DNA of 64,000 nt, taken from NCBI GenBank assembly GCA_965649765.1, contig OZ287750.1:68882001-68946000 (forward strand). The letters run 5' to 3'. Source of the DNA: Bispira polyomma (Eukaryota). This document shows positions 14,878 to 59,305 of this stretch, one piece after another. Each line of letters begins with the position of its first letter. Positions within the stretch are counted from its first letter, which is position 1. Both the position numbers and the translations under genes were made by a program. Under the pieces are notes generated by a model. That model saw only the letters and a list, made by a program, of their open reading frames with translations. It was not told the origin of the DNA and searched no databases.

Positions 14878-15612
14878 CTGCAACAAAGTGATAACTGACA
14901 ATGTTGGAGTTGTGTTGACAATGATATATAGATATTCTGACTTAAAGCTTCAAAGTAAATATAGGGCATATGTTTGGTAAAACTAAGATTTGTACACATT
15001 GAGCTTTTCTGTGGTGATATTTACCCGGTACATACACTTATAATTATCTTATAAACAGTTACAATAAACATAATGCTAACAAAAGATAAAACCAGACTAA
15101 AACTTGGGAACTTTCTGTGTCCAGGACAAGTACTCTTGTACATGATAATTCAAATCAACGAGTGTAATACAGGTGGTAATGAGATTTATTTGTAGGCCGA
15201 CACATATTCGTTACTCTGCTAACTATATATGACCAGGCCAAGTAGTTAGCAATCAATAAATGAAACAGGTTAACACTCAATTACCAACAGAGCGTCAGTT
15301 ACAGGCTAATTACTCATTAAATGCTCAGTCATCAATTCTCAAAAGTTTGTGACTTACAGGCTAATTACTCATTCACTTAAAAACTAAGTAATCCCACTAC
15401 TCAATTACTCACTAAGCTAGACCTCTCAAACTTTACAATGCATCACAGCCAAAACCAGCTGAGCTGTTCAAGTAGCTAAACAAGTTATTTATTCTAATTC
15501 CCATATTGTCCCTCTGATAGTGAGAAGGAAATTAACTGATTTCATTAAAATCACACTTCTATTCTAGATCAATGAACCAACGACATTTCCCAGGCTTTGA
15601 AAATGAGCTTAC

Positions 15613-19869: not shown

Positions 19870-19951
19870 ATATTGCTTTGTCTGGTTGCATGGTATTATG
19901 TTGATCAACCTTTACAAATGTTACTTTGTCTGCTTTGTGTTTGTGTTATAG

Positions 19952-37457: not shown

Positions 37458-38732
37458 TCCAGTAGGCACTCAACATTTTTTGATATCAAATTTTTGTCTA
37501 TAAATGGACATACCGCCATTTCGACGTCATTTTGGCATCACAATGTATTGACCATATATTTAGACATCATTAAGACATCATTATAATGTACACTATCTGA
37601 CATATATTTAGATGTCATTATGATGTACACTATCTGACATATATTTAGATGTCATTATTATGTTATGACATTCCTCATATAAATTCATGTAGAAGAGAAT
37701 TGTGGGAATGGTCATTTTTGTAATTGCCCAGCAGGTACACAGCAAATATGATTATGTGGGTCTTAAATAGGCAGCATATATATATTTACAGAATATAAGC
37801 TGTTTGTGAGGGCAAAACTGGAAAATATGCACCAAGGTCGGGACAATATGGCTTGAGGGTTGTCAGGCCCGAAAGCCATGTTGGGCTGACCAAGGGTTTA
37901 TTATACCGAAGCATTTTTAAGTTTTTGAATAAAGATATTCTTTCAATAAGGAATTTTGGTCCCGACATCTATTTTTGCCCCTTACTCCTGTGACGAGTAT
38001 ATCAACAATTTAACCATGGCGGAAGAAGTCACCAGTGTATCAAGAACGTTTAACAGCAAATTCAATATAATGTATCTACATTTGTTAATTGTGTGTTAAA
38101 CTATAAATTTTTAATATCCCTTGTATAAAAACACAAATAATCAATTGTGCTTGCTAAACTTTACAAGTGATATGGCCTGCTGCATTGATATGGCCCCCGA
38201 CTCCCGGGCCATATCGGGAAATATGGTATGTCATGTGATCGCATTTTAAACAATAGGATCGCTAGATTTGCCGCCGAGGTATAATAAATATATAAATAGA
38301 TGTATGGGTCCCATAAATATGGAATGCATGAACATGAATTTAAAAAAATTATCTAAAGCACAAAACAGCTTAATTATTCAGACACTGACAGCCATAAGTT
38401 ATACTATATTATATTAGTTATATACCAGACATATTTCTTACAGATTTTGTCCACCTGAAATGTATGCACCACTTTGGTAAGGCTAAAGGTGGAAGGGTAA
38501 AGGCAGTTGCTAAAATATACTGCCTGCACCTACCCCTGTCCCTTCTCGTCCTCCTCTTAACCCCCCTCCCCCCCTGTTTCTCTCAGATACTCCTCATTTA
38601 TTGGTTGAATTTGAAAGTTCGATGTCATATATCTGACGTCTAAATGACATCATATTTCTAAAAAAGATGTTAGTTAGACATCGGGGTGGTACGTCATTTA
38701 GACATCATTTAGACATCCTTTTGCCTGCTGGG
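37458..38732. mobile_element. Non-autonomous CCCAG-type (EnSpm/CACTA-like) element inserted in the Gypsy integrase
   Basis: Ends TCCAGTAGGCA...TGCCTGCTGGG with a 2-bp TSD GA (37456-57, 38733-34). Removing it restores the integrase reading IEIDPLEDTLSKTII. TAGACATC subterminal repeats are present. Confidence 0.8.
37780..38290. mobile_element. Possible non-autonomous Crypton-like element nested in the CCCAG element
   Basis: Sits between (AT)n tracts and has asymmetric internal inverted motifs (TTATTATACC / GGTATAATAA; CAATATGGC / GCCATATCG) with no TIR/TSD pair. The family assignment is from recollection of similar elements only. Confidence 0.4.
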
Positions 38733-41700
38733 GAGGATCAATTTCTATGCAGTCTGAATAATGATCAACTGTAACCAAATAATTTATTCCAGTGTATGTG
38801 CATATGTCCTTATTGACATATTGCCATGAAAATTCTGGAATCGGCTGTCTGTTTTTCCTAGAATATTGAGCACATATTCCACAATTGCTACAGGTATCTG
38901 TTATCGCTGCCTGCATGCCAGGCCAAAATATTATGCTTTTGCACATTTGTATATTACTATTTGCTCCAAGGTGTGATGCATGTATTCGTTGAAGCATTTT
39001 CTTTTGCATAACTGCTGGTATTACAGCCTGGTAACCACGATAAACTATCCCATCCACAATGGACATTTTGTCACGGAATCCCCAATAAGGAGTGAGCACT
39101 TCTGCCAGATCATGCTTATTGTTTAGCCAGCCATAGTGAATTGTATTTGCAAAAAAACTCATGATAGGGTTATGCCTGGTGGCCATTTGTAATTCCATGG
39201 TTGTTTTTGTGGTGAGATTTGTATTCTGAATCTCATCTGAATCTTTCACAGTCAACCGAAATATTTCAAAAAATGTTTGTTTTGATTCATTTTTGGTTGG
39301 TAGAGGTGATCGTGATAAAGTATCAACTAGTACTATTGAGGTACCCTTCTTGTATGCATTCATATTCTTGTCTTTATCTGTCTATTTGGCTTTATTTTTT
39401 CTATCACTGTCATATTTGAACACCACTCTGTTGGTTCGTCATGTTTGGACAATTTGCCTGATTTCACCAATCCAACTTTTCTCTATTGCGTTGTCGCTTC
39501 GCAGCAGGGATTCTATGTACTGGAGCATGAACTGGTGTTATCTTCTCATTTAAAATAAGAGACACTGGTGTTCCAAGATCTTCAAGTCCCCTGAAATTGT
39601 CCTGGTAACTTTTTAATAGGTTATCTCTTGTTAACTTGCCAATGCAAACATTCTTAGCTTTCACAGCATGCAGCGAACTGTTACTTCCAGTAGTATGTGT
39701 GATGACACATGAAGGATCAAACTTGATCAAGTTTAGTTTCAGTGAGTCTTTAAGACTTAAAAGAGCTGGCTTATCTTTAATGTCTATACTATCTACAACT
39801 TCAAAATCCAGCATATCAAATCTTGTCTTTGATTCACAAAGAAGTGTGATCTTACCTAATGGTTGTATTGTTTCTCAGAGTATGTGTAGAGAACAGAGCT
39901 GGATGTAGTTAAGTCACTTGTTTTACCAAACAAGCTAAACATCTCAAAAGGCATTGTGTTGCACGACGCTGCACTGTCTAGCTGCAACTGACACGTTTCA
40001 AAATTATTTCCATCTTTAGATAATAATAATGACACAACATTTTTGGGGGTGCAGGATCATCAAAAGAATTTACAGTATCCAGTGTCTATGTATAGTCATG
40101 ACCGTACTCGTCTCCAGAGGATAGTTGTTGCAAGAAATCAGTATTGTAATAAAGCATGTAATTATCTTCTATTTTATCGATAGCATTAATATTTTTTTGT
40201 CTATCATTTTGCTTCTGTTTGGTCAACCATCTGTTCTTAAAATGATCTTTCGGACTGGGAGATACATTACTGAAGTGGTTTTCCTATAACAGTTTCTGCA
40301 GTGAACACCTGGTTTACCAGCTGGACATGTACGGCAAATGTGGTCTTCATATGCTCCGCAGTACTGGCATTGAATACATGCCCGAGATGATTGGTTCATT
40401 GGTGGACAAGCCTTGGGTCTGGAATGTAATCTTCTGGTATTAGTAGTATTTTGATTGTTTTGTTATCTATTTACAGGATATACCTGTTCATCAGTGTAAT
40501 GTGACTCCATAACCCGAGTGTTCAATCTATGAAGTTCAGCTCTTAATTTATCACTGTGTACACCGGAGACAAATTTGTCACGTATCAATTCCTCCTGGGC
40601 ATCAGTCATTTTGTTATACTCACATTTAGAACCATGATATTTACAGCGAACCTCAAAATCGGCAATTGAATCTTTAGGTTTTTGTTTACATGTGTCCATA
40701 AATGTCATTCGTTGAGCTAACATAATGTCTTGTCCAGGGTGCCATTGCCATAGCTGCTTTACTTCATCATCAATCATTTTTAGAACAATAGAAGTCTTTA
40801 CCATTTTTCAAACTGTCACTGGCAGTGCTAGTCGAAAGGCATTGATTTCAGAAGCATAGTGATCTGCTTTCCAGTGGTCATTACTGGAGGCATCTTTAGT
40901 AGTGTCCTTCTATCCTTGCAATATGCACCAATTTTTGAACTGATCCAACAGTTCAACAGACTCCTGGCTGTCATCGCAACTACTAAGATTAAGAACAGGA
41001 GGTTTTCCTTTGGCCATGCCTGAGTGAAAATACAATACCCTATCACTTCAGACTGTGGTAAACTACTTTTAACAAGAAGTTCAGCAATTTGTTATGATCG
41101 GTACATGCTAAACTTTGTACATCTTAACAATTGGATTGCTATTTTATGATAAAATAATCTATGTTGATACAGAACTTTAGTTAGTGGAGATTACAAGTTA
41201 AACCTAAATCTGGTGAACAATTTTGATGTATTGAGGAAAAATACAGAATAATCAATGAATAATAATTATAACTTTTTTTTTAAAATCCCATTATTAAATT
41301 TCTTGCCATATGTTTTCCATATTAAGATGATTCTCCCTACTTTCCATTCTGTTTTGTAAATTAGGCGATTTCTCCCCAAACTGTATATCGTACATTAGGC
41401 GATTTCTGCCTGAGAGTTAAGAAATCACCTCCGAGTTTTAGCAGGTATCCGATTTTCTGTAAGCATTTAAAAAATATTTAAGGGTACATACTACACCTTG
41501 GATTAAATTTCCCTGGTCCGGGGCGGTTGGACCAGGGCTTGTAAATCGAAGCCCTCGTTACACTAACGATTTTGTTAGGTCTTGGTTAAGGCTCAGTTTG
41601 CAATGTTTTGTGTAAATTAAAGCCTTAGTTAGTTTACTGTTGGTTAATTTTGTTCGTAAAACCACCCTAATTGAAGGACAACTCAGATCCTGTTGGTAGC

Positions 41701-43092
41701 TGTTAGTTAGACCATATATTCACCAATAAATCAATAAAAACAATGGTAAAATGCCAGAAAAAAAATTGATGCCCAATTTATGGACTATATTTGACTTTCT
41801 ATGTTGAAATAGTTTGTAAAAATCAATAAAGTTAACACTTCTTCACGTGTGTTTATGTGGCCAATGCACCCAAACATATTTGTTATGATATCTTTGATAG
41901 GATCTGTTGGGAGATGTGGATGAGTACATTGTCTTTTACGTATATTTCAAAGTTCTAGATATATGATACACATAACTTATTGTTACTCTTGATGGATCAA
42001 TAACTCTGTATAATACATATAAAGGCTTGTTTTTTGTTAAATGGGTCATAATTTCTACATTTATATTGTAACCACATAATGTAGCTCTTCGTTTGGGCTG
42101 AACTAACGAAAAGCTAACCAATGCTTTCTATTTACCCACAGAGTTGATTAGGTAATGTCTGGTAGTTCTGTTGTTACATGTTTGTTAGTTGGAATTTTAA
42201 TGAAGGTTTCCATTTACAGCCAGGGCCCAGGGCGGCAGGGCATAAAAATTTAGAAAATTTAAAATGATTAAATGGCTGTATTTAAATAAATACTCCCAAA
42301 AAAATATTTGTTTGTGGTACCAAGAGAAACCTTTTTTATGTACGTTATGATAGGTTTTCCAAATTCAATTGAAATAAATTGGTTATGAAGAAATTGTTAA
42401 AGTTGCACTGTATATTCCCTCAGGGCATTTTTTTCCCCAGGGCGGTTTTTTTAGGGCGTTTTTTCCAGATTCATTCCAACTTATTTGACAGAGATTTTTA
42501 AACCAATTTCAAATGCTTGTAACTTTTTTAATAATGTTGTGTTGTTAAAAGCAGTTTCATCAGCAGGTTAATACGTTGAAGCTGACACAAAATACAGCTA
42601 TATATTGAATTGAGTTTGGTAAAACATGATAATAGGTTTCTAGTAATACCAAAACGAAAATTTTAGTTGTAGTATTCATATAGATACAGCTATATTCCTA
42701 CGATATGTTATACCAACATTATTTAAAATACTTCTATTCTACTTTAATTTGTAGCCTACACCATAATCCCAGGGTGTTTTTTCACCACAGGGCGTTTTTC
42801 CTAGTCCATTCAGTTTCCGAGTGATATTCCGAGTTGTACGTAGTATGTACCATTTTCTAAAAAAAAAAAAAAAAAAATGTGGGCGATAATAGAGTATTCT
42901 ACGAAACGACCAACGCTTTGACACGTGTGGAGCCAAGTTAAAACTTGCTAAAATAGCTGACATTACTGTTATGTGGTCGTAAAGGTTAATTAATTCATAC
43001 ACAATATAGAAATATATTCTACGCATACCGCCAGACTGCATTAGGTTAACGCACAACGTCCTCGTATGGTGTTGCGTAGACCGACTTTTAGA

Positions 43093-45773
43093 TAGACGTG
43101 GTTACTGCGGCGATCGTCAGTTAGCTGTCTTATCGCCGTGGTACGAGCCCACATAGAACTGGAGATTTCTAAAAACTTTTAAAATTTTTTTTTAAATATT
43201 TTTTTTAATTGTTTTTCAAGTGTTTTTAAGGTTTTCATTTTTAAGTAAATTTGTATCTACAAATTTACTTATTCACATACATGAGAAGGTGATTGCCCAT
43301 GGCACCAAGACCAGAAGTTGAGGACAAGCTGGAATCGCTCACTTTTTGGTCTTTTTTACTGAAACTTTGTGTGTGTGTTGTAGATAGGGCAAATTTGTTT
43401 TTGTGGTTTTATATCTTTTTTTTATGGAGTTATGGCAATTTTTATGTAATCCAGGCGGAATCCCCCCTCCCGTTGCTAAGGCGGCTAAAAACGCTGTCTC
43501 ATATCTTGTACATGGGGCAAAAACAATTTTAGGCCTTTATGACTGTTTATGTAAAAGTTATAGTGTTTTTCCTAAAATCCAGGGGCTGTTTGGGGGGGGG
43601 GGGGGGGGGGAATTGATTAATGATATAGCAAAACCTCCACCTTTTTACCATGTTTTATACCAAAGCTGAGTCTATGTTGATATTGATTTTCCCTTTGTAG
43701 TCAGTTATACTGAAGGCCACTTCTTTTCCTTTACCAGTGGCTTGTTATTTTGATCTCTTTTCTCTCACTATTTCTCTTCTTAATTAAGGAAAACTATTTT
43801 GATATGTGTGTGTTTCTCTTTATTTAATATGTACAATATAGCAATATTGCTGACAGCCTATATATGTCTTTACATATTATTTGCTAATTAAGCGTCCCTT
43901 GAAAAGAGCACTTATTTGGTTTCACCCCTGGTTTCCTCGCTGTCGCCGCCGCCACCGCCGCCGCATGGTCTTCCTTGAATATCTCCTTCAATATTATCTG
44001 CATCAAAATTATTTTTGGCAGTTCTCTTAACCAGGAGTGGGATGTTTTTTTCTTATTCTTGGCTTTGAACTTTGGCCTACTTAAATATCAGGTGACCCTG
44101 GGGGTGTAAAAGTGCTTGTCACTAGGTTTTCTCAGAAAGTATTCATCATAGCTCAATGAAATTTGGTATGTGCCTTGGTAAGGCAATTGTCATGACGGGA
44201 GACGCTGATGAGATTAATCGAATGATTATTGACCGATTGATTTTTATTAAAATGCGAAAAATCGGTACTTTTTTGCTATCTTGGAAACTATTGGGATTTC
44301 GGCTTTTTCTTGGTATAAGTTATTCATCTACTTTTTGATTTTATGTATGATGTAAAAATCTCACAGTTCTAAGTCCAGTACTCAATGAATACTGAGTACT
44401 TCAAATGAGTAGTTTGCTCTATTTTGCTCTATCTTGCACTTTTATCAAGTTTTCTTTTGAAGTACTTGTCATAATTCAATGAAATTTAGCATGCACATTG
44501 CAAATACCAAAGCATAGATTTCCGCAAATTTTTAGATCAATCTGGTGATAATTGACCGATTGACAGGGTTGATCAATCATACAAAATGGGGAAAAAAATG
44601 TGTTGATGGGTGCTTATTTGAGCGTGTGAGAATTTTTTTTATTTTTAATTTTAAACCAGTACATGCAGCGCGTAACTTTTAAAGAATAACCTGAAATTTT
44701 ATTTATTTTTTATGCCATCCAAAAATATGCGATCGTTACTGATATAAAACGATTTCAATTTCAAAAATTTCAAAAATTAAGGTGTTGTTTTTAAATGTCC
44801 ATTATCTCGGAAACAGTGCTAGATAGAGCGATTTCGAGCTCTTTTCGACCCACAGACTTGGTTTTGCTTATGTGTAAACTTTCAAAAAATTTTGAATTTT
44901 GGCAGCCATCTTTAATTTCTGCGACTTTTTTGAAAATATCCGTTATCTCGGAAACGGTGCTAGATAGAGCGATTTCAAGCTCATTTTTGACCCATAGGGT
45001 TGATTTTGCTTATATGTAAACTTTTAAAAGAATGTTCGATTTTGGCGGCCATCTTGAATTTCTGCGTCTTTTTCGAAAATGTCCTTTATCGTGGAAACGG
45101 TGCTAGATAGAGCGATTTCAAGCTCATTTTCGACCCACAGGGCTGATTTTCCTTATATGTAAACTTTTGAAGAAATTTTTATGACTTGGGCAACCATCTT
45201 CAATTTCTGCGTCTTTTTAGAAAACGTCTGTTATCTCGGAAATGGTGCTACAAAGAGCGATTTCGAGCTTATATTCAACCGAAGGTGCTGATTCTGCTTA
45301 TATGTCAACTTTTAAACAATATCAAACCTTGTACACTAAACAATTTCATTATTATTTTAACTTTAGGGACGCTTCGTTTTTGTTATCAAAAACCGTTTTC
45401 TAGTTACTGTTCTATTTATTGTAATTAACTAAAATATATATATGAAATTTTTGAGGATGAAATTTTTTTTTTGTTGGTGTTTCAAATTTGTGAGGGAGGG
45501 GGGGGGGGGGGGTTGATGGGGGAGAAGGGCGGGGTTGAGGTTTTTTTGGGGGTAGCGGTGTGGGTGAAATTTTTTAAGATGAAATTTTTTTTGGGTGGTT
45601 TGGGGGGGGGGGGGGGGATATATTTTTTCCCCACCCCTAGCAAATTTACTGCTTGTCCCTATGGGCCACTCTTATCTTGTTTGTTGTCTGTTTTAAAAAA
45701 TCTCCAGTTCTATGTGGGCTCGTGCCACAGCGATAAGACAGCTAACTGACAATCGCCACGGTAACCACGTCTA
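43093..45773. mobile_element. AcademH-like non-autonomous element B
   Basis: ~75-bp TIRs TAGACGTGGTTAC...GTAACCACGTCTA; 9-bp TSD ACTTTTAGA at 43084-43092 and 45774-45782. Contains a HINE insertion. Confidence 0.78.
43886..45403 (+). mobile_element. Helentron/HINE non-autonomous element (4 satellite units)
   Basis: 5' AAGCGTCCCT and 3' AGGGACGCTT subterminal inverted repeats, (GCC)n microsatellite, 3' hairpin GTTTTTG-TTAT-CAAAAAC, CTAG end and ~142-bp internal tandem units. Confidence 0.85.
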
Positions 45774-46018
45774 ACTTTTAGACCGAGTTTTCTGTCCTTG
45801 ACGATGCTCCAGTTCTATGTGGGCTCGTGCCACAGCGATAAGACAGCTAACTGACAATCGCCACGGTAACCACGTCTAACTTTTAGACCGAGTTTTCTGT
45901 CCTTGACGATGCTCCAGTTCTATGTGGGCTCGTGCCACAGCGATAAGACAGCTAACTGACAATCGCCACGGTAACCACGTCTAACTTTTAGACCGAGTTT
46001 TCTATCCTTGACGATGCT
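45702..46018 (+). repeat. 3 x 105-bp tandem array made from the junction of elements B and A
   Basis: Units start at 45702, 45807 and 45912 with one substitution in total. Each unit is the right TIR of B, the TSD, and the start of the left TIR of A. Confidence 0.92.
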
Positions 46019-46776: not shown

Positions 46777-47545
46777 ACCGACTTTGTGCCCTCTCTGTAA
46801 AAGGGTGCAGAATCTCACAATATTGAAGTAAACACTTACTTTTTGCAACAGGATGCTAGTGTAAACACCAACCACACAACAAGATGCAACTTATTTTCTT
46901 ACTTGCTGTAATATGGTCTGCGGTGTTACAGCACAGACCCATGATATATCTTTCAAACTGTACTGATCTCTTAGTAGATGCACTGTTTGAATATGGCGGT
47001 GGATCTGTCCTTGGTTTCATCCAGGACCTACGCGCATCGCTACAGTGGCCAACCTAACTTTTGCGTCGCGTTTTCGCGACCGTGCGGCTCACCACATTCC
47101 CTTTTGTGGCGTTTTTGAGGCCGGCTCCTATGGGGAATAGAACTTGGCACACATGTAATGACGTTTTTCAGGGTGTTACTGTTCATCTATTCAAAACTAA
47201 TTTAATTTACGCTACCACTATTTCAGAGCTCCCATTTTACAGCTTTCATTACCTAGCTGTTTTTGGAAAGGGTGCATTTCATTTCTCTATAGTTTTCATT
47301 AATAACTGTTTATTTTTTACTTGTACAACATTTCAACACTGTTCACATTTACAACTGTTTATTTTTCAGACTACTTCACCATTGTTACCATTCACATTTC
47401 ATTGTTCATTTTAATTATTTAATTGAATTGTTCATTTAAACTGTACTTTTTAATTGTTCATTTTAACTTTACTTGCAACCCTCGCCACACATGACAAACT
47501 TAACCGACACCAACTAACCCCAATTGATACCCTATTTCTCCCACA

Positions 47546-48400
47546 TCAGTTTGTTAGCCTGTAGAACTGATTAGCATTCTGCAAGGTCACTGTCACAACC
47601 TCTTCCACTGTCAACCCTTTGAGATCTGTGATCCTTTGGGCTACGATCAGAATGCCATGAGGGGAGTTATAGGAATACATCCGATGCTCACAAACCTTCA
47701 AGTGGGGAGACTCAGTTTTAAATAAGATTTTCTCCAAAGGCAGTCCCTTAATCACTTTCTCTATATCAGGATGACGCTCTGGCCTCAGTATCGACCCGGT
47801 GAACCCAAATTTTACATTTGGGAAAGTGTTTTGCCATTTCTCTGCCTCGCTGACTTCCCCATTGTAGCAATGCCTGTGTATTTTGTACCTGTCCTCTTCA
47901 CAGGCTGGCAACTTACTACACATAACCTTCAAAGACAGTTCAGTTGCATCTGTGTCCTGGTTATAATCCCAGCAATGTATGACCAGGACTTTGGAGAATA
48001 GTTGTTTTTTCACATAGAAGCCTAAAAGATCTTTGAGGATCGCAACTTGATGTTGCATCAGTGCTGAGTGACCTGAAGTGCGCTCAATCCCCATTTCTCC
48101 AATAGCCACGCATCGGGGTTAACTCTCCACCAGAAACTTCAATAGATCCAGATGGGCTTTATTGGCTTTATGAGCTTCCTTTGGGTGAACCCAAAATGCA
48201 AACCACAGACCGCTATCCCTCTCTATCTGACGCAACTCCCTGTTGCTTGGCAAGTCATCGCAAAAGTTCGCGACCGCTGCTTATAAATAAGCACATACAT
48301 AAGGCTGGGGACCATATTTAAGCATAGAATCCAGATGGGAATACCTGCTTATGCGTCTGGTTCTATCAAAGTGGAAATGATAATCCTTGAAGAGCAGTTT
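47546..48400 (-). pseudogene. Intronless TatD-family (TATDN2-like) nuclease domain, disrupted
   Basis: The frame of ORF 47546-48109 extends upstream through two stops: DYHFHFD (48365-48385, D-x-H-x-H motif), ANFCD, FWVHPK (GxHP), then VAIGEMG, VIHC, IHRHCY and LPLEKILFKTESP (ETDSP). All TatD motifs are in order. Confidence 0.88.
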
Positions 48401-48959
48401 TTAATTCGCTTTAAAGTAATCCTGCCTCCCGCTTTGGAATTGCCTCTCCTAATCTCCGTACTACGTGCTAATCTCATCGGGCCATCTTTGCCTGGCTTTC
48501 GCACCTATTTTTTTGTACACGGTCAACACCAAAAGTAACACTCTTTTTCTCCCCTTGTTTAGATTCTGGCCCAACAGACAGGTTTTGGATTCCAGTCGAG
48601 GTTGACGGTTTCACCAGACCCTTATACATGTTGGCAATCAACTTGCTTGTAGTAGGCTCTGGTGATTTCATTTCAACATCTTGAATCTGATCCGCATTTA
48701 CCAGTTGAATTGGCACTTTATTTTTTTCGGACTGACTAGAATATTTGATAAAATTAGTCCCTTATTCTTCCCCATAACACAATAGCCATTTCTCCAGTAA
48801 TTAGCACTGATGTTAAAGCCGTTGTTCTCAGTACAGTTATTGGTAATACACAGATTCTTCTATCAAGTATCACTCAGGAATTTTCAAAAGTAGCTCCTTC
48901 CTCACTTTTAATTTGACTGATCTCTCTTCGGCAACTTTATTTAAACAGAATTTGAAATT

Positions 48960-49265
48960 TCAAAGTCCAATACTGCCCCAAAATGACACAAGAAATCTAT
49001 GCCAATAATTAATGGGTCTTTTTTAGCAGCAACTAACACATTCCACTTTTGACCTTGCTGATTGATTCTCGAAAGAAATGTCCACATCTTGTAATAACCA
49101 GGCATTAATTTTTATGTTTTTACCTACTCCAGATAATTTATATTTTTCTGTTAATCGAGGTCTATCGTGCAATTTCCATACATCTCAAAACTCATTAAGC
49201 TAACCTCAGCCCCAGTATCTAATAACACCTTCGTGGAAAAACCATTCACTGTACAAGGCATAATA
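48960..49265 (-). pseudogene. Retroviral-type aspartic protease domain
   Basis: IMPCTVNGFSTKVLLDTGAEVSLM at ~49195-49265 and, after frameshifts, DPLIIGIDFL at ~48990-49020. Confidence 0.85.
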
Positions 49266-49359
49266 GCACTGAGATTTTGTTGATTTGCCGCACACAACTG
49301 ATTGCAATGATATGGAGAATAACCGTCCTGATGGATATGAGAAACAGTGTGGATTTTCT

Positions 49360-49408
49360 AGAGGGATGGGTCACTGTCGTCCATGCCACCTCCCCTTTCT
49401 AGTTTAAA
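49360..49408 (-). promoter_or_regulatory. Putative -1 frameshift signal between gag and protease
   Basis: T_TTA_AAC (49402-49408, -) directly followed by TAG, then GGGGAGGTGG...CCATCCCTCT, which can form an imperfect stem. Confidence 0.6.
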
Positions 49409-52400
49409 GAAACCATCTTAGCTCCGCCATCCACATAACCCCCACACGGTGGACTACCTTTTAAATCACCCCTTGGTGACCTATAGAGAGGATTTGCTTG
49501 GTAGCCACTCGGTGGCTCCACTTGGGATGACGTCTTCCAGTTCAGATCATCATATCTACTAGTATTATATTGAGCTCTTTGAGTACTGTAACTACCCCTG
49601 TTAGATCTTGAGTTTTGAGATGTATGGGAAATTGCAAGATAGACCTCGACTATCTAACTGTTATTTCAGCTAGGCCTGTAGTTATATTTCAGTTGATCTC
49701 TACGAAGTTCATAAGAATCATCATATCTATTGTGGTCTCCATTTGCTATTCATTACCAGAACTATCTGTATTTGTGATAAACTGTAACTGCTGTACCATC
49801 TTAGTGGATGCTTTCTTTCCATATATAGCTTTTCTCATGTGCTGTTCCTGTTTGATATATTTGTACGTCTCCTGCAGTGTAGTTGGTGATTTGATACCAG
49901 CCACTAAAGCTGAAGATTTATCCCGACACCCTTTTAAGAAGGCCTTGATGAACATAGCACAATTGAGTTCCTGTTGAGCTTTTTCAGGGTATGCACTGAT
50001 TATCATTTTCTACAATCGAGTTAAAAACCTCTCTAAAGGCTCATCTTCCCGTTGCTCGACTGCTAAAAGCTTCCAAAGGGTTGTACTTGGGACATCTGTT
50101 TTTCATAATGATTTTAAAATTTGTTTTTTATTTCCTCAAAACTACTGGTCACTGAAGCTGATAATATGCTGTAGAATTCAGAAGCTTCTTTCCTCAAACA
50201 CATGGAAAACGCATCAATCTTGGTTGCCTCTGTCCACGACATACTCTTGGCATATGTTTCAAATTGCCCAATGAAACCTCTTGAATGTTAGTTTTGATAC
50301 ATCCAAAGTCCCATGGTTTCGTATGCTGGTAGTACTGATGGTAGCGCTCACTTTAGCTGACTGTGCTCCACCTGCTCCTTCTACCTTACTGCCCAAAGAA
50401 CTGCCTGCGTCATCGCTTTCCTCCATGAAAGTCATTTTCTCCACCATGGGTGTTACCGGGCAAGAGTGCTTCTTCGATTTCCCCTTCTGAGCTTGAGTGT
50501 GGGATGACTTCTCACTCACATATCGCGCACCCACTGTTTTCGGAAAATACCCGCTGAAGGGCTGGCTTAACCACTGGGGTAGAAGACAATGCTTTGGATC
50601 CCTGTTCTTTAGGGGCAGGGGTATATCTTCTACGGACACGATCAGATTGAGGGTTTCCTAAGTCATACATCTCCCCGAAATCCATTTCATCAAGGGAAGG
50701 GGGTCTGGCCCTAGTACAACTTCAGCCTTTGATAGCAAATCATACCGAGTCCATTCCAAATCTTTTTGCAAGCTTGAAGGTAAAGTGAATTTGACACCAA
50801 ACTTCTGTTTCATGTCAGTAACGCCTTCACGCCTTACAGATTTCCTTGCCTTCCTCATGTATCAGCTCTCCTGCGAACTCCTGATTTTGATCTATCAGCT
50901 TTTCAGCTTTCGCAACCAAATCTCTCCTTCGCCCTTGCATTTGCTGTACCCGATTAATTTGAGTCTCCTTTTAGCATGATTATGCCAATGCCTATTGGCA
51001 TAATCATGCTTTCCTGTAGAAAGGGAATAGTGTAAGAACCTTGGTTACGCATGGTTACGACGTGTCCACAGGGTAATCTCTGAATCTGTAAAGAGTTGTG
51101 CTCTTAAATTTCAACAAAAAGCACTGAACGGCCGAATCCCTCTTTGTTGACAGAGCCGATAACTCTTGCAATGATCTGTTGAGATCCTTATCGAGGGAAT
51201 TGAGTTACACCCCCGATGTCGTCTCGATGCTGGTAGTAGCTACCTGTGGTTGCAGTTTTAGCTTGTCCTCATCATCCAACGTCCTGCCTTAATATGACCA
51301 ATTCCTTTGTTATTGGTTGATGTTGACTTACCACCTGCTGATTGAGATCTGACACCTGCTTCTCCGTTGACTGGATATGCAAGGACACGCCAACTAGCTC
51401 GTTCCACAGTTTTGCTATCTCCCGATCATGGGTTTGCACGTCACTTCCGACCTTGTCATCGAGCATACGTACTTCCCTATCTGTGGACTGAATGCGCTCC
51501 AACATACCAATCACTTCCTGCTGTATTTCCGAAACTGCTTGAGTGTTAACCTTTACATCTACTTTAACCTCAGTCACTGCAGTTCCGATATCAACCTTGA
51601 CCTTTTTAATGTTGCTGTTCACTTGATCGGACACTTTAGCAACTTTCTGTCAAACATTCTGAATATCCTGTTTAGCACTTTGCATATTTTGTCCCAACTT
51701 CACACCCAGTTTTTTAACACTGGAATCAAGGGTATCCACCCTACTTTCCACCATACCATATTTTTCCTTTTTTTCCCACTTTCCCAACTAGTGCCACAAC
51801 ATTAGTGTCAAGATTGGCTACCTGCGACCCTCCTACCTAATCACACTTATTTTCAGCGAGTCTGATACGTTTAGGCAACACAACATTTGTTCACCAACCT
51901 GTTTGTAGTCACTTTTATTTTCGTTATGCTCCCCTGTTATGTCGGTACACCAAGAATCTATTCTACCCATGTACCCATGTACAAGGAGTTGATCAAGTTT
52001 TCGGTCAAATTTCTCTACAAACACTTCTTGCGATCGCGATTTCCTAAGAAAGGTTTTACAAAAAGCTGTCCCCAATCACTTTGATTCAGGTTTACTGAAA
52101 TCTATATCGATTCAGGTTTACTGAAAGCCATATCGATTTAGGTTTACTGAAAGCCATATCAATTTCCTGGTTGCTGTGTCGTTATTGGTTGTCACTGATT
52201 GCAACGTTTCCAATTTTACAAAAGCCACATCCTCATCAGCCTTTGAATTTGCAACGATCTTGTTTTTTCAAAAGTCATATTGTAGTCAGTTGATTGCAAC
52301 TGCTCTGAACATCTCCAAGGTCTCCCACAACGCTCCGTTGCGTCCAGAATGTCTTAAGATCACTTCTCAACAATCCCGGATATTGACACTAATTCTTCCA

Positions 52401-52450
52401 TAGTGACTTTCTTGATATCAGTTTGCCTCAACTCAACCTGTACAGCCATG
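49399..52450 (-). pseudogene. gag: Gypsy-type gag, fragmented
   Basis: Heptad coiled-coil region at 51272-51780; capsid-like motifs WTEATKIDAFSMCL, QREDEPLERFLTRL, AYPE and FIKAFLKGCRDK at 49746-50260; Ser/Arg-rich tail. The start position is approximate. Confidence 0.72.
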
Positions 52451-52919
52451 TTATTTCCTAAATCACGAAAACGCAACTTAAAAGAAATTTGTAGCAAGTA
52501 ATTGAAATTTCAAACTAAGCGAAATTGCCTCACACAATTTGAACACTTGAATCTTTATTTCGATAAACCTTTTCAAAACAAACTTTACCACCCAACCACA
52601 ATTGTAATAAAACACAACTTAGTCCAGAATATATTTTATTCCAATCAAACTAGCCTATTTTACTCTAAAAAATCACAGAACGTGCAACTTGACGAGAGGA
52701 ATTTGTTACTTAACTAGTTAATTGGTTAAAATTTTAATAACTTTCAGCTTGGTCAATCTAATCTAATTTACTCTGAGAAATCACAGAGCATGCAACTAGA
52801 ATATTTAGTAACTTGACTAAGTGATTGATTTCTAATCAATAGATATTGATTCACTATATCATGCAAATTTTATATTTGCGAAATAATAGCAAGAATTTAC
52901 ACTTAAATTTTTTTTCTAT

Positions 52920-54923
52920 AATTAAGCGTCCCTTGAAAAAGGCGCTTATTTGGTTTCACCCCTGGTTGTGCCGCCGCCTGTGCCGCCGCCGCATGGTCTT
53001 CCTTGAATATCTCCTTCAATATTATCTGCATCAAAATTATTTTTGGCAGTTCTCTTAATCAGGATTGGGAAATTTTTTTCATATTCTTGGCTTTGAACTT
53101 TGGCCTACTTAAATGTCAGGTGACCCTGAGGGTGTAAAAGTGCTTGTCACTAGGTTTTCTCAAAAACATTCATCATAGCTTAATGAAATTTGGTATGTAC
53201 CTTGGTAAGGCAATTTTCAGGACGAGAGACGCTGATGAGATTAATCGGGTGATAATTTACTGATTGCCAACCGATTGATTTTTATTGAAATGCGAAAAAT
53301 CGGTACTTTTTTGCTATCTCGGAAACTATTGGGATTTGGGCTTTTTCTTGGTATAAGTTATTCATCTACTTTTTGATTTTATGTATGATGTAAAAATTTC
53401 ACAGTTCTAAGTCCAGTACTCAATGAGTACTGAGTACTTCAAATGAGTATTTTGCTCTATTTTGCTCTATCTTGCACTTTTATCAACTTTTCTTTTGAAG
53501 TACTTGTCATAGTTCAATGAAAATTAGCATGCACATTGCAAGTACCAAAGCATAGATGTCCGTAAATTTTTAGATCAATCTGGTGATAATCGACTGATTG
53601 ACAGGGTCGATCAATCATACAAAATGGGGAAAAATATGTGTTGATGGGTGCTTTTTTGAGCGTGTGAGGATTTTTTTTATTTTTAATTTTAGACCAGTAC
53701 ATGCAGCACGTAACTTTTAAAGAATAGCCTGAATTTGTATTTATTTTTTACCCCATCCAAAAAGATGCGATCGTTACTGATATAAAACGATTTTAATTTC
53801 AAACATTTTAAAAATTAAGGTTTTTTTTTAAATGTCCATTATCTCGGAAAATTTCAATTTTGGCGGCCATTTTGAATTTCTGCGTCTTTTTGTGAAAATG
53901 TCCGTTATCTCGGAAACGGTGCTAGATAGAGCGATTTCGAGCTCATTTTCGATCCACAGGGTTGATTTTACTTATATGTAAACTTTTAAAAAAATTTCAA
54001 TTTTGGCGGCCATCTTGAATTTCTGCGTCTTTTTCGAAAACGTCCGTTATCTCGGAAACGGTGCTAGATAGAGCGATTTCGAGCTCATTTTTGACCCACA
54101 GGGTTGATTTTGCTTATATGTAAACTTTAAAAAAAATTTCAATTTTGGCGGCCATTTTGAATTTCTGCGTCTTTTTGCGAAAATGTCCGTTATCTCAGAA
54201 ACGGTGCTAGATAGAGCGATTTCGAGCTCATTTTCGATCCACAGGGTTGATTTTACTTATATGTAATCATTCAAAAAATTTTTAATTTTGGCGGCCATCT
54301 TGAGTTTCTGGGACTTTTACGAAAATGTCCTTTATCTCGGAAACGGTGCTAGATAGAGCGATTTCGAGCTCATTTTCGATCCACAGAGTTGATTTTACTT
54401 ATATGTAAACTTTTTTAAAAATTTTAATTTTGTCGGCCATCTTGAATTTCTGCGTCTTTTTCGAAAATGTCATTTATCTTGGAAACGGTGCTAGATAGAC
54501 CGATTTTGAGCTCATTTTCAATCCACAGGGTTGATTTTGCTTATATTTAAACTTTTAAAAAAATGTTACATTTTGGCGGCCATCTTGAATTTCTGCGTCT
54601 TTTTCGAAAATGTCCTTTATCTCAGAACCGGTGCTAGATAGAGCGATTTCAATCTCCTTTTCGACTCATAGGGTTGATTTTTCTTTTATGTAAATTTTTA
54701 TAGTAATTTTTGATTTGGGCAACCATCTTCAATTTCTGCGTCTTTTTAAAAAACGTCTGTTATCTCGGAAATGGTGATCCTTTTCGAGCTTACATTGACC
54801 AAAAGTGCTGATTCTGCTTATATGGCAACTTTTAAACAATATCAAACCTTGTACACTAAACAATTTCATTATTATTTCAACTTTAGGGACGCTTCGTTTT
54901 TGTTATCAAAAACCGTTTTCTAG
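52920..54923 (+). mobile_element. Helentron/HINE element (7 full plus 1 truncated satellite unit) in the leader of the TatD element
   Basis: Same termini as the 43886 copy; units recur every 142-143 bp (53906, 54048, 54191, 54333, 54475, 54618, 54761). Confidence 0.88.
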
Positions 54924-55851
54924 TTTATTTTTGGCCAAAACTTGAATCAGAAGCAAATTGTGTGTACTAAAGCAAATCGACAAATGCCACGATTCACACT
55001 ATATATATTTTTATATTTTTTAGTTTAGTACACTGAATCGCACTTATACTCAGTACAATGTAATATTAATTACACACACAATTCACAGTAAATTTTTATA
55101 TCACCAAATTAGGTACAAACTCACTGTATATCCCTTCAATTTTCAAAACTGAAAGATAGCACAATATAATTTTTACACATAAACACAACTTGCCACTTAA
55201 TAAATTGTGTAAATTATTTTTAAAATTTTTAACCACAAGGAAACCAGATATAAAAAAGTGCTACGTCTACACCAATTTACTTCTGGTACCAAGTAAACAC
55301 TCACCTTATTGCAACAGTATGCTAGTGAAACACCAACCACGCAACAAGTTTAATATTGCTATTTTCGGGGAAGTTCCGGCCGTTAACAGTTATTATTGTA
55401 ATACATATGTAAAAGCCTTTGTTTTTAAGTCACCATGACGTGATAGAAGAATAAATTCTTGATCCACGATATCGTTACATGAGTCACGCCGTAATTTGAA
55501 ATATTTAAATTTGAATCTTTTAATGTGCTAACAGTGACTTGCAACAAAGTTAATATAAAACACTGATATATGTTGTTATCCTCGATGTGCAATTTACTGA
55601 CAAGTCGTAAAATATATCACTCGTATATTATTTAAAAATTGCACACATATTATTAAACGTATGTAACGAGCTAATAGTTTTAGGTGCAGATCATAACTAC
55701 AAGGTCAAGACTAGGTCAGACCAGAATGTTTCTTTTCTAAAAGTCTTTGAGGAATATTTGTATAAACCCATGAATTTTTTGTGACTGTATAATATTTTTG
55801 CGACAATGTCAGTTATATCTAACATGTTTCCAGTTTGAAGGCACCTTTAGG

Positions 55852-56756: not shown

Positions 56757-57540
56757 TCAGCAATGGTACACAAATTAGACATATCTAGTATATCTGAGAA
56801 GACCATTAGGTCTACAATATAATCTCAATATCAAACATATTGCAGCAAAATCAAAATGATGTAGAGATCTGAGTTCAGGTAAAACCATACAACTCCTGCA
56901 AAGAATTTATATTAGAACACTAATGAGGGAACAAAAGGCTATAACAGTTAATTTCGCCCCATCCTGAATGAACAAAATCTTTAGTTAATCAACTAAGGCT
57001 ATTTATAGTGATGAGTGATGCACTGTCTTATAGGAGTTGGTGTAGTTTTTATCAGCGCTATGTTCATAAAATACTTATCAATGTTAAAGGTCAATTTTCA
57101 TGAACAAAATGGCTGTCACAGCCAAAGCGGCAGTGATTATTTGAAGGATAGATGCATTAGTCGACTGACAAATATAGCGACTCGAACAGCTGTCTTTTTA
57201 TTGTAGATGTGCACATAGATCATACTAAACCTCTAAACTATAAAAACTCTAATAGATCCTCTCAAATATCGCAACAACAAATAAAAAAAGCTTAAAGGTA
57301 ATTTATAAAATCTTGGCACATCACCTAATCACTACAGTTAACTAGACATCTGTTTATGGGGCCCTTTTTCGTGGTAAATTTTTCAACGTGTTGGAGGTGC
57401 ATGGCAGTAACTTATTTTATTACTTTTGTCAGGAGATTGTCTTTACATTTCTGTTTGTAGGTGTAATAAATCAAAACGGACATATGTGACAATTAATCGG
57501 TCAATAATAAATTAAAAAAATATTCAGCTGTTGTTTAAGT

Positions 57541-59113
57541 AATTAAGCGTCCCTTGAAAAGGGCGCTTATTTGGTTTCACCCCTGGTTTCCTCGCTGCTG
57601 CCGCCGCGTGGTCTTCCTTGAATATCTCCTTCAATATTATCTGCATCAAAATTATTTTTGGCAGTTCTCTTAACCAGGAGTGGGAAATTTTTTTCATATT
57701 GTTGGCTTTGAACTTTGGCCTACTTAAATGTCAGGTGACTCTGGGGGTGTAAAAGTGCTTGTCACTAGGTTTTCTCAGAAAGTATTTATCATAGCTCAAT
57801 GAAATATGGTGTGTACCTTGGTAAGGCAATTTTCAGGACGCTGATAAGATTAATCGGATGATAATTGACCGATTACCAACCGATTTATTTTTATTGAAAT
57901 GCGAAAAATCGGTACTTTTTTGCTATCTCGGAAACTATTGGGATTTGGGCTTTTTCTTGGTATAAGTTATTCATCTACTTTTTGATTTTATGTAAATTTT
58001 TAGATCAATCTGGTGATAATTGACTGATTGACAGGGTCGATCAATCGTACAAAATGGGGAAAAAATGTGTTGATGGGTGCTTTTTTGAGCGTGTGAGGAT
58101 TTTTTTTATTTGTAATTTTAGACCAGTACATGCAGCGTGTAACTTTTAAAGAATAGCCTGAACTTTTATTTTTTTACCCCATCCAAAAATATGCAATCGT
58201 TACTGATATAAAACGATTTCAATTTCAAAAATTTTAAAAATTAAGTTTTTTTTTAAACGTCCATTATTTCGGAAACGGTGCTGGATAGAGCGATTTCGAG
58301 CTCATTTTCTACCTAGAGGGTTGATTTTGCTTGTATATAAACTTTCAAAAAATTTTCAATTTTAGCGGCCAACTTGAATTTCTGCGTCTTTTTCGAAAAT
58401 GGACGTTTTCTCGAAAACGGTACTAGATAGAGCAATTTCGAGCTCATTTTCGACCCGCAGGGTTGATTTTGCTAATATGTATACTTTCAAAAAAGTTTCA
58501 ATTTCTTGAATTTCTGCATCTTTTTCAAAAATGTCCGTTCTCTCGGAAACGGTGCTAGATAGAGCAATTTCGAGCTCATTTTCGACCCACAGGGTTGATT
58601 TTGCTAATATGTATACTTTCCAAAAATTTTCATTTTTGGCGGTCATCTTGAATTTCTGCATCTTTTTCGAAAATGGACGTTATCTTGAAAACGGTGCTAG
58701 ATAGAGCAATTTCGAGCTCATTTTCAACCCACAGGGTTGATTTGGCATATATGTAAACTTTTGAAAAAATGTTGAATTTCTGCATCTTTTACGAAAATGT
58801 CCTTTGTCTCGGAAATGGTGATAGATAGAGCGATTTCAAGCTCATTTTCGACCCATAGGGCTAATTTTTCTTATATGTAAACTTTTGAAGTAATTTTTGA
58901 CTTGGGCAACCATCTTCAATTTCTGCGTATTTGTAGTAAACGTCTGTTATTTCAGAAACGGTGCTACAAAGAACGATTTTGAGCTTATATTCGACCAAAA
59001 ATGCTGCTTATGTGTCAACTTTTAAACAATATCAAATCTTGTACACTAAACAATTTCATTATTATTTCAACTTTAGGGACGCTTCATTTTTGTTATCAAA
59101 AACAGTTTTCTAG
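57541..59113 (+). mobile_element. Helentron/HINE element (6 satellite units, internal deletion) just upstream of the AKAP7-like coding exon
   Basis: Same termini and core as the 43886 and 52920 copies; lacks the block between TTTTATGTA and AATTTTTAGATC. Confidence 0.88.
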
Positions 59114-59305
59114 TTATTGTTTAATTTACAGGTGGAGTTGTAGAAGATTTATGGGTGATATTGCAAATAAAATAGACTCTTGTATGGATCTTTGGGACTT
59201 GTGTTTTCTGTAGGCAGTAGACATGGCAGCATGTGATAAAATAATGGAATACCCATTGACATGAAACTGTTACATGCCTAGTGTACTGTTATCAGTATTA
59301 ATATT

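What the first reader, a model, noticed from the sequence alone, without database searches (positions are those of the whole stretch)
46796..55388. LTR-type element with gag, protease and a TatD nuclease in place of RT/RNase H/integrase
Seen: on the - strand, a coiled-coil/capsid gag is followed by TTTAAAC+TAG, a DTGA protease, ~550 bp of linker with no RT motifs, an intronless TatD domain with all motifs in order, a purine tract and a candidate LTR. Known: TatD proteins are TIM-barrel metal-dependent 3'-5' exo/AP nucleases, TATDN2 has been linked to RNA:DNA hybrid processing, and TatD is not a standard Ty3/Gypsy domain. Inference: either a non-autonomous particle-forming element that packages a protease-released nuclease, or a deletion derivative of a Gypsy lineage carrying TatD as an extra domain. 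This copy is dead (stops, frameshifts, ETDSP changed to KTESP).
Basis: partly seen in the sequence, partly recalled or inferred. Interest (0 to 1): 0.88.

Follow-up and report, generated by a model that had tools for sequence, protein, structure and literature searches.

The report
Deleted Gypsy retrotransposon carrying TatD nuclease
This is a dead, internally deleted copy of a Ty3/Gypsy-type LTR retrotransposon; complete relatives carry a third gene downstream of pol for a TatD-family nuclease, an accessory gene I could not find reported for such elements.

Summary
On the minus strand lie an LTR end with a primer-binding site, a coiled-coil/gag ORF, a TTTAAAC slippery site followed by TAG, a DTGA protease, a TatD domain (Pfam 8e-23), a purine tract and a 3' LTR. 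There is no RT, RNase H or integrase.

TatD does not replace RT/RH/IN. Related loci from public assemblies have the order gag, TTTAAAC, PR-RT-RH-IN, then a separate third ORF, then purine tract and LTR. That ORF has an S/R-rich start, a CCHH zinc-knuckle/helical domain, an acidic linker and TatD.

The window copy matches the closest relative (L090, 66-75% nucleotide identity) up to just past the protease. It resumes in the ORF3 linker, so about 5.5 kb is missing. It also has frameshifts, stop codons, ETD changed to KTE, a 5' LTR cut to about 62 nt and a nested 2-kb repeat.

The element-borne TatDs form one clade (97/94 support). It is separate from named TATDN2, keeps its catalytic motifs in intact copies and shows pN 0.23 against saturated pS.

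No paper in the searched library links TatD with Gypsy/Ty3. Verdict: a new variant of a known kind. What the nuclease does is inferred only.

The parts
55292..55352 (-). Remnant (last ~62 nt) of the 5' LTR. It ends ...GGTGAGTGTTTAC(T). The upstream part of the LTR is missing.
   Evidence: 90% match to 46826-46883. No other part of 46884-47548 is found anywhere in the window.
55280..55291 (-). Primer-binding site TGGTACCAGAAG
   Evidence: Single match in the window. The same 12-mer directly follows the 5' LTR in L003, L088 and L091.
52919..54925 (+). Nested foreign repeat in the leader: a non-coding element with ~143-bp internal tandem units. It is not part of the retrotransposon.
   Evidence: Two further copies lie at 43885-45405 and 57540-59115, with different flanks.
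49399..52449 (-). ORF1, broken by frameshifts and stops. It has an N-terminal helix-hairpin-helix-like start, a coiled coil (51739-51275) and a gag capsid region (50825-49710).
   Evidence: tblastn of L090, L089 and L003 fragments gives 33-79% identity, in three different frames. Nucleotide identity to L090 is 75% over 526 nt.
49402..49408 (-). TTTAAAC -1 frameshift slippery heptamer, followed by TAG at 49399-49401
   Evidence: The same heptamer plus a nearby stop sits at the gag/pol junction of L003, L088, L089 and L090.
48735..49417 (-). Aspartic protease (DTGA at 49208-49219) and the stretch after it. Broken by frameshifts.
   Evidence: Pfam gag-asp_proteas 9e-5. 54% amino-acid identity to L090 and 70% nucleotide identity.
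48586..48735 (-). Deletion junction. Homology to L090 stops at L090 ~4800 and resumes at ~10250. About 5.5 kb holding RT, RNase H, integrase and the ORF3 N-terminal part is absent.
   Evidence: No RT/RH/IN match in the element.
47546..48586 (-). Remnant of the ORF3 linker plus the TatD nuclease domain (about 48409-47549) and its TGA stop. In-frame stops inside the domain at 48281-48283 and 48119-48121, with three more upstream. HCRD is changed to HCWD and ETD to KTE.
   Evidence: Pfam PF01026 8e-23. 43% identity to L090 over 312 aa. X-masked read-through. Alignment.
47530..47542 (-). Polypurine tract candidate GGGAGAAATAGGG, directly after the TatD stop
   Evidence: A purine run in the same position relative to the TatD stop occurs in L001 and L090, and 85-150 nt downstream in L089, L003 and L088, where a TG-starting LTR follows it.
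46827..47529 (-). 3' LTR, about 700 nt. The start is inferred; only the last ~62 nt (46827-46887) are verified by the match to the 5' remnant.
   Evidence: Analogy with the AT-rich stretch of several hundred nt after the purine tract in L090.

Best explanation
**Shown.** The locus is a decayed, internally deleted and 5'-truncated copy of a Ty3/Gypsy-type LTR retrotransposon.

Complete relatives have this order: LTR, primer-binding site, ORF1 (helix-hairpin-helix-like start, long coiled coil, capsid, CCHC knuckle), TTTAAAC -1 frameshift, ORF2 (PR-RT-RNase H-IN), ORF3, purine tract, LTR. ORF3 is about 870-890 aa. It has an S/R-rich N-terminus, a CCHH zinc-knuckle plus helical domain, an acidic linker and a C-terminal TatD nuclease.

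The window copy lost about 5.5 kb, from just after the protease to the ORF3 linker. This places TatD about 0.5 kb behind the protease. The copy is non-functional: frameshifts in gag and PR, five in-frame stops before and inside TatD, the metal-binding ETD motif changed to KTE, a missing 5' LTR promoter part, and a nested repeat in the leader.

**Inferred.**
- ORF3 descends from a cellular gene with the same N-domain plus TatD architecture, captured once.
- It is kept by selection because it helps the element.
- It is probably translated from its own, perhaps spliced, mRNA. Donor-like GGTGAGT or CAG|GTGA sequences lie at the LTR end and primer-binding site. A pyrimidine tract plus CAG lies directly before the ORF3 ATG.
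- The most likely activity is a Mg-dependent 3'-5' exo/endonuclease acting on replication intermediates, or on surplus cDNA or RNA:DNA hybrids. This is by analogy with TATDN2, which degrades the RNA strand of R-loops.

Whether the window's deletion arose before or after insertion cannot be told from one copy.
For: **Domains in the window:**

**Co-linear homology to L003, L088, L089 and L090, with the gap:**

**Full architecture of relatives:**
- L003 has 97-99% identical LTRs and the same primer-binding site.
- L088 has 99% identical LTRs.
- L089 has intact ORF1 (1133 aa) and ORF2 (1318 aa), plus ORF3.
- L090.
- The slippery site is conserved in all five.
- The primer-binding site is shared.
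- A purine tract follows TatD in these loci and in short contigs from other samples.

**ORF3 is a separate ORF:**. Intact 868- and 887-aa versions carry all TatD motifs.

**TatD phylogeny:** the element-borne TatD clade has 18 rows and 97/94 support. The window sits in a 5-row subclade at 100/99.

**Purifying selection:** pN 0.23 against pS 0.82 for L003 vs L088, and 0.35 against 0.83 for L091 vs L092.

**Multi-copy:** protein clusters at 90% identity have 9-70 members on different Mb-scale contigs.

**Shared N-domain:** it also occurs in non-element TatD proteins such as Pecten maximus LOC117320398.

**TATDN2 biochemistry:** PMC10711561.
Against: - All related loci were found through TatD, so the fact that every deletion variant keeps TatD is by construction.
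- Six of the informative loci come from one assembly (ERZ22147071). Its host shares a repeat family with the window's genome, so the taxonomic spread is poorly known.
- No target-site duplication can be shown, and only 62 nt of LTR pair.
- No expression, splicing or enzymatic data exist.
- The element TatD is not inside the named TATDN2 clade, so the analogy to R-loop processing is loose.
- A gene predictor's ORF calls on assemblies do not prove translation.
Confidence: 0.85

Rival explanations
1. A propagating non-autonomous family (gag-PR-TatD) that forms particles and is copied by RT/IN supplied in trans, with TatD released by the protease.
For: Deletion variants with near-identical LTRs exist in the family: L088 lacks IN and has 99% identical LTRs, and L091 is LTR-PBS-ORF3-LTR at 98%. 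The window copy keeps the primer-binding site, gag, PR, purine tract and 3' LTR.
Against: Only one copy with this junction is known. Each deletion variant found has a different breakpoint, as expected from independent accidents. Young LTRs do not tell a pre-insertion deletion from a post-insertion one. In intact relatives TatD is in a separate ORF, not in the polyprotein. PR and TatD frames cannot be related in this decayed copy.
Confidence: 0.1
2. Chance neighbours: a processed retrocopy or fragment of a host TATDN2-like gene landed next to an unrelated gag-PR fragment.
For: TatD is intronless here. The nearest non-element relatives are cellular-looking proteins with a C-terminal TatD.
Against: The same gag...TatD-purine tract-LTR order recurs in L003, L088, L089 and L090 inside single LTR pairs. 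I saw no poly-A tail after TatD; a purine tract follows the stop instead. The window TatD is nested in the element-borne clade next to L090's, and its gag and PR are also closest to L090.
Confidence: 0.02
3. ORF3-TatD is a passenger. It was captured once and carried along without any role in the element's life cycle.
For: No functional data exist. LTR retrotransposons do pick up host fragments. L003 lacks the first HxH motif of TatD yet has young LTRs.
Against: The domain is conserved across subclades only 35-45% identical. Invariant catalytic H/E/D positions remain and synonymous sites are saturated. Intact ~870-aa ORFs persist. The N-domain and TatD are kept together.
Confidence: 0.12

Closest known systems
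Ty3/Gypsy (Metaviridae) LTR retrotransposons with a third ORF, e.g. errantiviruses with env (PMC13524379, PMC5408687)
   Same: LTR-PBS-gag-(-1 frameshift)-PR-RT-RH-IN-ORF3-PPT-LTR layout. ORF3 has its own start after the pol stop, in the env position. Donor- and acceptor-like sites suggest a subgenomic mRNA.
   Different: ORF3 is a soluble-looking S/R-rich protein with a zinc knuckle, helical domain and TatD nuclease. It is not a membrane fusion glycoprotein. Gag has an unusually long N-terminal coiled coil.
Ty3/Gypsy elements with acquired enzymatic or chromatin domains: chromoviruses, and orchid elements with an m6A demethylase domain (PMC9289625). Pol relatives seen here carry Macro, PHD or zf-CW domains.
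   Same: A host-derived accessory module fixed in one lineage of LTR retrotransposons.
   Different: The module here is a TIM-barrel TatD nuclease in a separate ORF. I found no report of it in the searched library.
TATDN2, the vertebrate TatD-family nuclease that degrades the RNA strand of R-loops (PMC10711561, PMC12709183)
   Same: C-terminal TatD domain behind a long N-terminal region. HCRD and HxHC motifs with cysteines. ETD metal-binding motif, with E705 and D707 needed for full activity in the human enzyme.
   Different: The element TatDs form their own clade outside the named TATDN2 clade. They carry a folded CCHH/helical N-domain that I did not detect in the named TATDN2 sequences. Activity is untested.
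Non-autonomous LTR retrotransposons that keep part of the coding region, e.g. TR-GAG (PMC4350172)
   Same: LTR element that retains gag (here also PR) but lacks RT and IN.
   Different: TR-GAG is a recurrent, amplified structure. Here only a single decayed copy is known, and it also carries a nuclease remnant.

Membership tests
Ty3/Gypsy LTR retrotransposon | Paired LTRs | tested here: inconclusive
   Only ~62 nt pair (46827-46887 with 55292-55352, 90%); the 5' LTR is truncated. Relatives have full pairs of 200-365 nt at 97-99% identity.
Ty3/Gypsy LTR retrotransposon | Primer-binding site after the 5' LTR and a purine tract before the 3' LTR | tested here: met
   TGGTACCAGAAG at 55280-55291 is identical to L003, L088 and L091. 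GGGAGAAATAGGG at 47530-47542 is positioned as in L001 and L090.
Ty3/Gypsy LTR retrotransposon | gag capsid and DTG aspartic protease, joined by a frameshift | tested here: met
   Homology to L003 gag, which hits Retrotrans_gag at 3.5e-8. DTGA protease. Conserved TTTAAAC with pol in the -1 frame.
Ty3/Gypsy LTR retrotransposon | RT-RNase H-IN in that order | tested here: not met
   Absent from the window copy. Present in that order in L003, L089 and L090. The copy is therefore a deletion derivative of a member, not an autonomous member.
Ty3/Gypsy LTR retrotransposon | Target-site duplication | tested here: inconclusive
   The true 5' end is lost. A 7-nt CAATATT near both ends is offset by 5 nt and I take it as chance.
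TatD/TATDN metal-dependent nuclease (PF01026) | Profile match above the curated cutoff | tested here: met
   81.6 bits against a cutoff of 27, E 8e-23. PDB profile hits to YcfH/TatD chains reach 5e-23.
TatD/TATDN metal-dependent nuclease (PF01026) | Intact metal-binding and catalytic motifs (HxH, GE.G.D, HCRD, HxH, ETD) | tested here: not met
   The window has HCWD and KTE plus two in-frame stops. Intact relatives P0403, P0414 and P0007 keep all motifs.
TatD/TATDN metal-dependent nuclease (PF01026) | Nuclease activity | not testable with these tools
   Needs a purified protein assay.
TATDN2 orthologue | Placement inside the clade of named TATDN2 proteins | tested here: not met
   The named TATDN2 clade (including axolotl XP_069499118) has 98/97 support and excludes the element clade at 97/94.
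Errantivirus-type (env-bearing) Gypsy | ORF3 encodes an envelope or fusion glycoprotein | tested here: not met
   The only Pfam domain in ORF3 is TatD. The N-domain model (pLDDT 87.7) has no PDB fold match at E below 2. No hydrophobic anchor is visible by eye in P0403; no TM predictor was run.

The most novel reading that the evidence does not exclude
A lineage of Ty3/Gypsy retrotransposons in marine-invertebrate-like genomes has domesticated a cellular zinc-knuckle/TatD nuclease as a third, separately expressed gene that its life cycle depends on. One possible role is trimming RNA:DNA hybrids or cDNA ends during reverse transcription or integration. Another is destroying surplus cytosolic cDNA or hybrids, so that the element escapes nucleic-acid sensing. 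In the second case a parasite-encoded enzyme would play the part TREX1 or TATDN2 play for the host.
Probability: 0.35. Interest if true: 0.8.

Novelty: new variant of a known kind. Interest (0 to 1): 0.6.

Why it matters
Accessory genes of LTR retrotransposons are rare and informative. Env, chromodomains, extra RNase H, dUTPase and a demethylase each revealed a step where the element manipulates its replication or its host.

A conserved, selected TatD nuclease in the env position would add a new enzymatic class to that list. It would also give a natural handle on what TATDN2-like nucleases do with RNA:DNA hybrids or cDNA.

There is a practical consequence too. 'TATDN2-like' gene models scattered through invertebrate genomes may be transposon ORF3s rather than host genes. 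One such model sits among transposon-like genes in the giant squid Hox cluster (PMC6962438).

The window copy itself is an ordinary dead fragment.

Tried and rejected
1. **Copies A and B of the 1.5-2 kb repeat (43885-45405, 52919-54925) as the LTRs.** Rejected: there is a third copy, the flanks differ, there is no primer-binding site next to them, and the real LTR end plus primer-binding site lies at 55280-55352.
2. **A very short 62-nt LTR with a CAATATT target-site duplication.** Rejected in favour of a truncated 5' LTR. In L090 and L001 the purine tract and LTR start follow the TatD stop directly, as in the window.
3. **Metagenome scan with a TatD alignment.** Five of those loci are labelled human gut metagenome. 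They are microbial contigs. I took no contig for human and did not examine them further.
4. **Viral contig scan.** Nothing found.
5. **Looking for PR/RT fused to TatD in predicted proteins.** None among 79 long TatD proteins (12 have CCHC knuckles), and none among 120 pol relatives.
6. **TATDN2 orthology.** Not supported by the tree.
7. **L091 as a reverse-transcribed spliced ORF3 mRNA.** Rejected: its junction lies inside ORF3 and 58 codons are missing.
8. **Fold search of the ORF3 N-domain.** No match.
9. **tRNA search for the primer.** None in the window or the loci.
10. **dN/dS proper.** Not computable because synonymous sites are saturated, so only pN and pS are given.
11. **Donor and acceptor sites.** I only describe them.

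Full report
**What is in the window**

The window is AT-rich (31-46% GC) and crowded with transposon remains.

- **TatD.** Stop-to-stop translation gives a 190-aa piece (47549-48118) that hits Pfam TatD_DNase at 8e-23, 81.6 bits against a cutoff of 27. Read in one frame with X at the stops, the domain runs from about 48409 to 47549. Its motifs appear in order: DYHFHFD, GEMG, HCWD, HRHCYNG, FGFTG, KTESP. Two in-frame stops lie inside it (48281-48283 and 48119-48121) and three more lie just upstream.
- **Protease.** It carries LLDTGAEVS (D-T-G-A at 49208-49219; Pfam gag-asp_proteas 9e-5).
- **End of gag.** Gag ends in GGT TTC TTT AAA C TAG. The slippery heptamer is at 49402-49408 and the stop at 49399-49401.
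- **LTR pair.** A 59-nt direct repeat (46826-46883 and 55291-55348, 90% identity) is the only similarity between the two ends.

**Related loci decide the interpretation**

An exhaustive profile-free search with the TatD piece gave a handful of close relatives at 35-52% identity. Below those came several hundred proteins with a C-terminal TatD behind a long N-terminus. None of 79 long ones carries PR or RT; 12 have CCHC knuckles.

Looking up where the close relatives are encoded gave the key result.

- **L003.** The TatD gene sits directly after gag, PR, RT, RNase H and integrase on one strand. All lie between two LTRs that are 97-99% identical.
- **L088.** Gag, PR, RT and RNase H, but no integrase, then ORF3 N-domain and TatD. 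Its LTRs are 99% identical.
- **L089.** Nearly intact: ORF1 of 1133 aa (weak helix-hairpin-helix hit, long coiled coil, capsid, CCHC), ORF2 of 1318 aa (PR-RT-RH-IN), and a third ORF of 714 aa that runs into TatD after one frameshift.
- **L090.** Gag, the whole of pol and ORF3 with TatD, broken by stops.

All five elements, the window's included, have TTTAAAC plus a stop within a few bases at the gag/pol junction, with pol in the -1 frame.

L003, L088 and L091 have TGGTACCAGAAG directly after the 5' LTR. The window has the same 12-mer, its only occurrence, directly after the upstream copy of the 59-nt repeat. That repeat is therefore the true LTR end.

**The deletion**

Fragments of the relatives were mapped on the window by tblastn. 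L090 is the closest, with nucleotide identity of 75% in gag, 70% in PR and 66% in TatD.

Homology is co-linear from the coiled coil through capsid and protease, to L090 position about 4800 (window about 48735). It then resumes at L090 about 10250 (window about 48586), in the acidic linker just before TatD. RT, RNase H, integrase and the N-terminal two thirds of ORF3, about 5.5 kb, are missing.

The segments lie in different frames: at least three frames in gag and three in PR. The copy is thoroughly decayed.

**The ends**

In L090 and L001 a purine run follows the TatD stop within 0-35 nt, and the LTR starts right after it. In L003, L088 and L089 it lies 85-150 nt downstream and is followed by an LTR starting TGT(A/G)GTGA.

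The window has GGGAGAAATAGGG at 47530-47542, right after the stop. The 3' LTR therefore most likely spans about 47529-46827, some 700 nt. L090 shows a similar AT-rich stretch of several hundred nt after its purine tract.

Only the last ~62 nt of that LTR have a partner upstream. Nothing else in the window matches 46884-47548. The 5' LTR is therefore truncated, and no target-site duplication can be established.

A 2.0-kb non-coding repeat (52919-54925, plus strand) is nested in the leader, between the primer-binding site and the ORF1 ATG at 52449. Two more copies lie outside the element.

**ORF3**

In L089 and L090 pol ends with a conserved ...H(L)xDY(H/S)I and a stop. After about 100 nt containing further stops, a new ORF begins at an ATG preceded by a pyrimidine run and CAG.

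Intact versions of 868 and 887 aa exist (P0403, P0414). Their layout is:
- an S/R-rich N-terminus;
- a conserved ~150-aa domain with C-x4-C-x8-(K/R)xH-x4-H, and later PPN..A.L.HWR;
- an acidic, serine-rich linker;
- a complete TatD domain with DSHMHLD, GEIGFD, HCRD, HFHCFNG and LETDSPY.

The N-domain has no Pfam match. It folds confidently (pLDDT 87.7) into a zinc-knuckle-like hairpin plus helices, but has no PDB neighbour with E below 2.

The same N-domain precedes TatD in non-element proteins at 22-28% identity over 150-190 aa. One is an annotated Pecten maximus protein. The whole ORF3 architecture therefore looks like a captured cellular gene.

Donor-like sequences lie at the LTR end and primer-binding site: GGTGAGT in L003, L091 and the window, and CAG|GTGA just after the primer-binding site in L003 and L088. 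Together with the acceptor-like site before ORF3 they suggest a spliced subgenomic mRNA. This is inference only.

**Phylogeny and selection**

In a careful maximum-likelihood tree of 56 TatD domains, the 18 element-type sequences form one clade (97/94). This includes all five with proven Gypsy context.

The window's TatD sits in a subclade with L090's and two short contigs (100/99). Named TATDN2 (axolotl) and its invertebrate kin form a separate clade (98/97). The domain is therefore TATDN2-like in architecture but is not a TATDN2 orthologue.

Between L003 and L088 the TatD codons differ at 82% of synonymous sites and 23% of non-synonymous sites. Between L091 and L092 the figures are 83% and 35%. 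Synonymous sites are saturated while the protein and its catalytic positions are kept. That indicates long-term purifying selection.

The ORF3/TatD protein clusters at 90% identity have 9-70 distinct members on different large contigs, so the gene is dispersed and multi-copy.

**Deletion variants**

Of seven TatD-bearing loci with enough context, four carry different internal deletions:
- the window (RT through the ORF3 N-part);
- L003 (ORF3 N-part and the first TatD motif);
- L088 (integrase);
- L091 (everything from just after the primer-binding site to codon 59 of ORF3, leaving LTR-PBS-ORF3-LTR with 98% identical 200-bp LTRs).

Because all loci were found through TatD, its retention in every variant is an ascertainment effect and proves nothing. 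Young LTRs cannot tell a deletion before insertion from one after. Whether the window's gag-PR-TatD form ever transposed therefore stays open.

**How it most likely works**

The window copy does nothing now. It lacks a promoter-bearing LTR, has broken ORFs, and the glutamate of the ETD motif is replaced by lysine. The equivalent E705A change abolishes activity in human TATDN2 (PMC10711561).

For the lineage, I take ORF3 to be a functional accessory nuclease. By analogy with the TatD family (Mg-dependent 3'-5' exonucleases) and with TATDN2 (which degrades the RNA strand of R-loops and needs its N-terminal region for binding), the N-domain would bind nucleic acid and TatD would trim RNA:DNA hybrids or DNA ends.

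The targets could be reverse-transcription or integration intermediates, or surplus cDNA that would otherwise be sensed by the host. None of this is shown.

**Is it known?**

Seven full-text searches combined TatD, TATDN2 or PF01026 with retrotransposon, Gypsy, Ty3, LTR or ORF terms. None found a paper linking them.

One hint: the giant squid Hox cluster contains a 'TATDN2' gene model among transposon-like genes. The library is not complete and Repbase notes are not covered, so novelty is likely but not certain.

Related pol proteins in the database carry other accessory domains (Macro, PHD, zf-CW). This clade is evidently prone to such captures.

**Limits and rules followed**

- The taxon of the window and of the ENA assemblies is unknown to me. 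A shared 143-bp repeat family shows that the window's genome and ERZ22147071's host are related.
- Short contigs from three other ENA samples (L001, L002, L004-L006) carry element-type TatD. L001, L004 and L005 show the ORF3 N-domain motif upstream of it, and L001, L002 and L004 show purine runs downstream.
- The window has no N runs.
- Broken genes were read only piecewise or with X at the stops.

Noticed in passing
window 43885-45405, 52919-54925, 57540-59115 (+): Three copies of a 1.5-2.0 kb non-coding repeat. The left end has a hairpin (AAGCGTCCC...GGGCGCTT). The right end has a subterminal inverted GGGACGCTT plus a second hairpin. Inside are 4-8 ~143-bp tandem units. It resembles Helitron/Helentron-associated (HINE-like) elements. 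The same unit occurs at 67-80% identity in L091 18123-18437.
   Followed up: partly
window 16343-20940 (+): Apparently intact DIRS-like retroelement with four consecutive ORFs. The third has RVT_1 (4e-8) and RVT_3. The fourth has tyrosine-recombinase-like motifs (HAFRRSGAT ... HGTW ... Y) but no Pfam hit.
   Followed up: partly
window 30325-31233 (+): PIF/Harbinger-type transposase ORF (DDE_Tnp_4, 9e-13).
   Followed up: partly
window 38698-40804 (-): Fragments of another LTR retrotransposon (Integrase_H2C2, 5e-10). It is not closely related to the TatD lineage: no tblastn match with L003, L088, L089 or L090 fragments.
   Followed up: partly
window 8560-10269 (-) and 13886-14901 (-): A 569-aa leucine-rich-repeat ORF (LRR_8, 1e-37) and ABC-transporter-like exon-sized ORFs. 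These are probably host genes.
   Followed up: partly
window 45702-46018 and 43090-43176; 12479-12977: Three 105-nt tandem units with an inverted partner 2.5 kb away. Separately, overlapping ORFs built from a ~41-aa repeat. Both are unexplained.
   Followed up: no
P0010: A 2002-aa predicted 'protein' made of 37 copies of a 53-aa TatD fragment. It looks like a satellite array derived from a TatD gene in some public assembly.
   Followed up: no
L003 3710-4471, L088 4169-4474, L089 340-3741: ORF1 of the lineage begins with a weak helix-hairpin-helix (HHH_3) match, followed by several hundred residues of coiled coil before the capsid. This is an unusually long gag N-terminus. The window keeps its start (ATG 52449).
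   Followed up: partly
L092 1-9460: Two tandem, 100% identical copies of a different Gypsy element with a SCAN-type gag. They lie on the opposite strand and cut off the 5' part of a TatD element.
   Followed up: no
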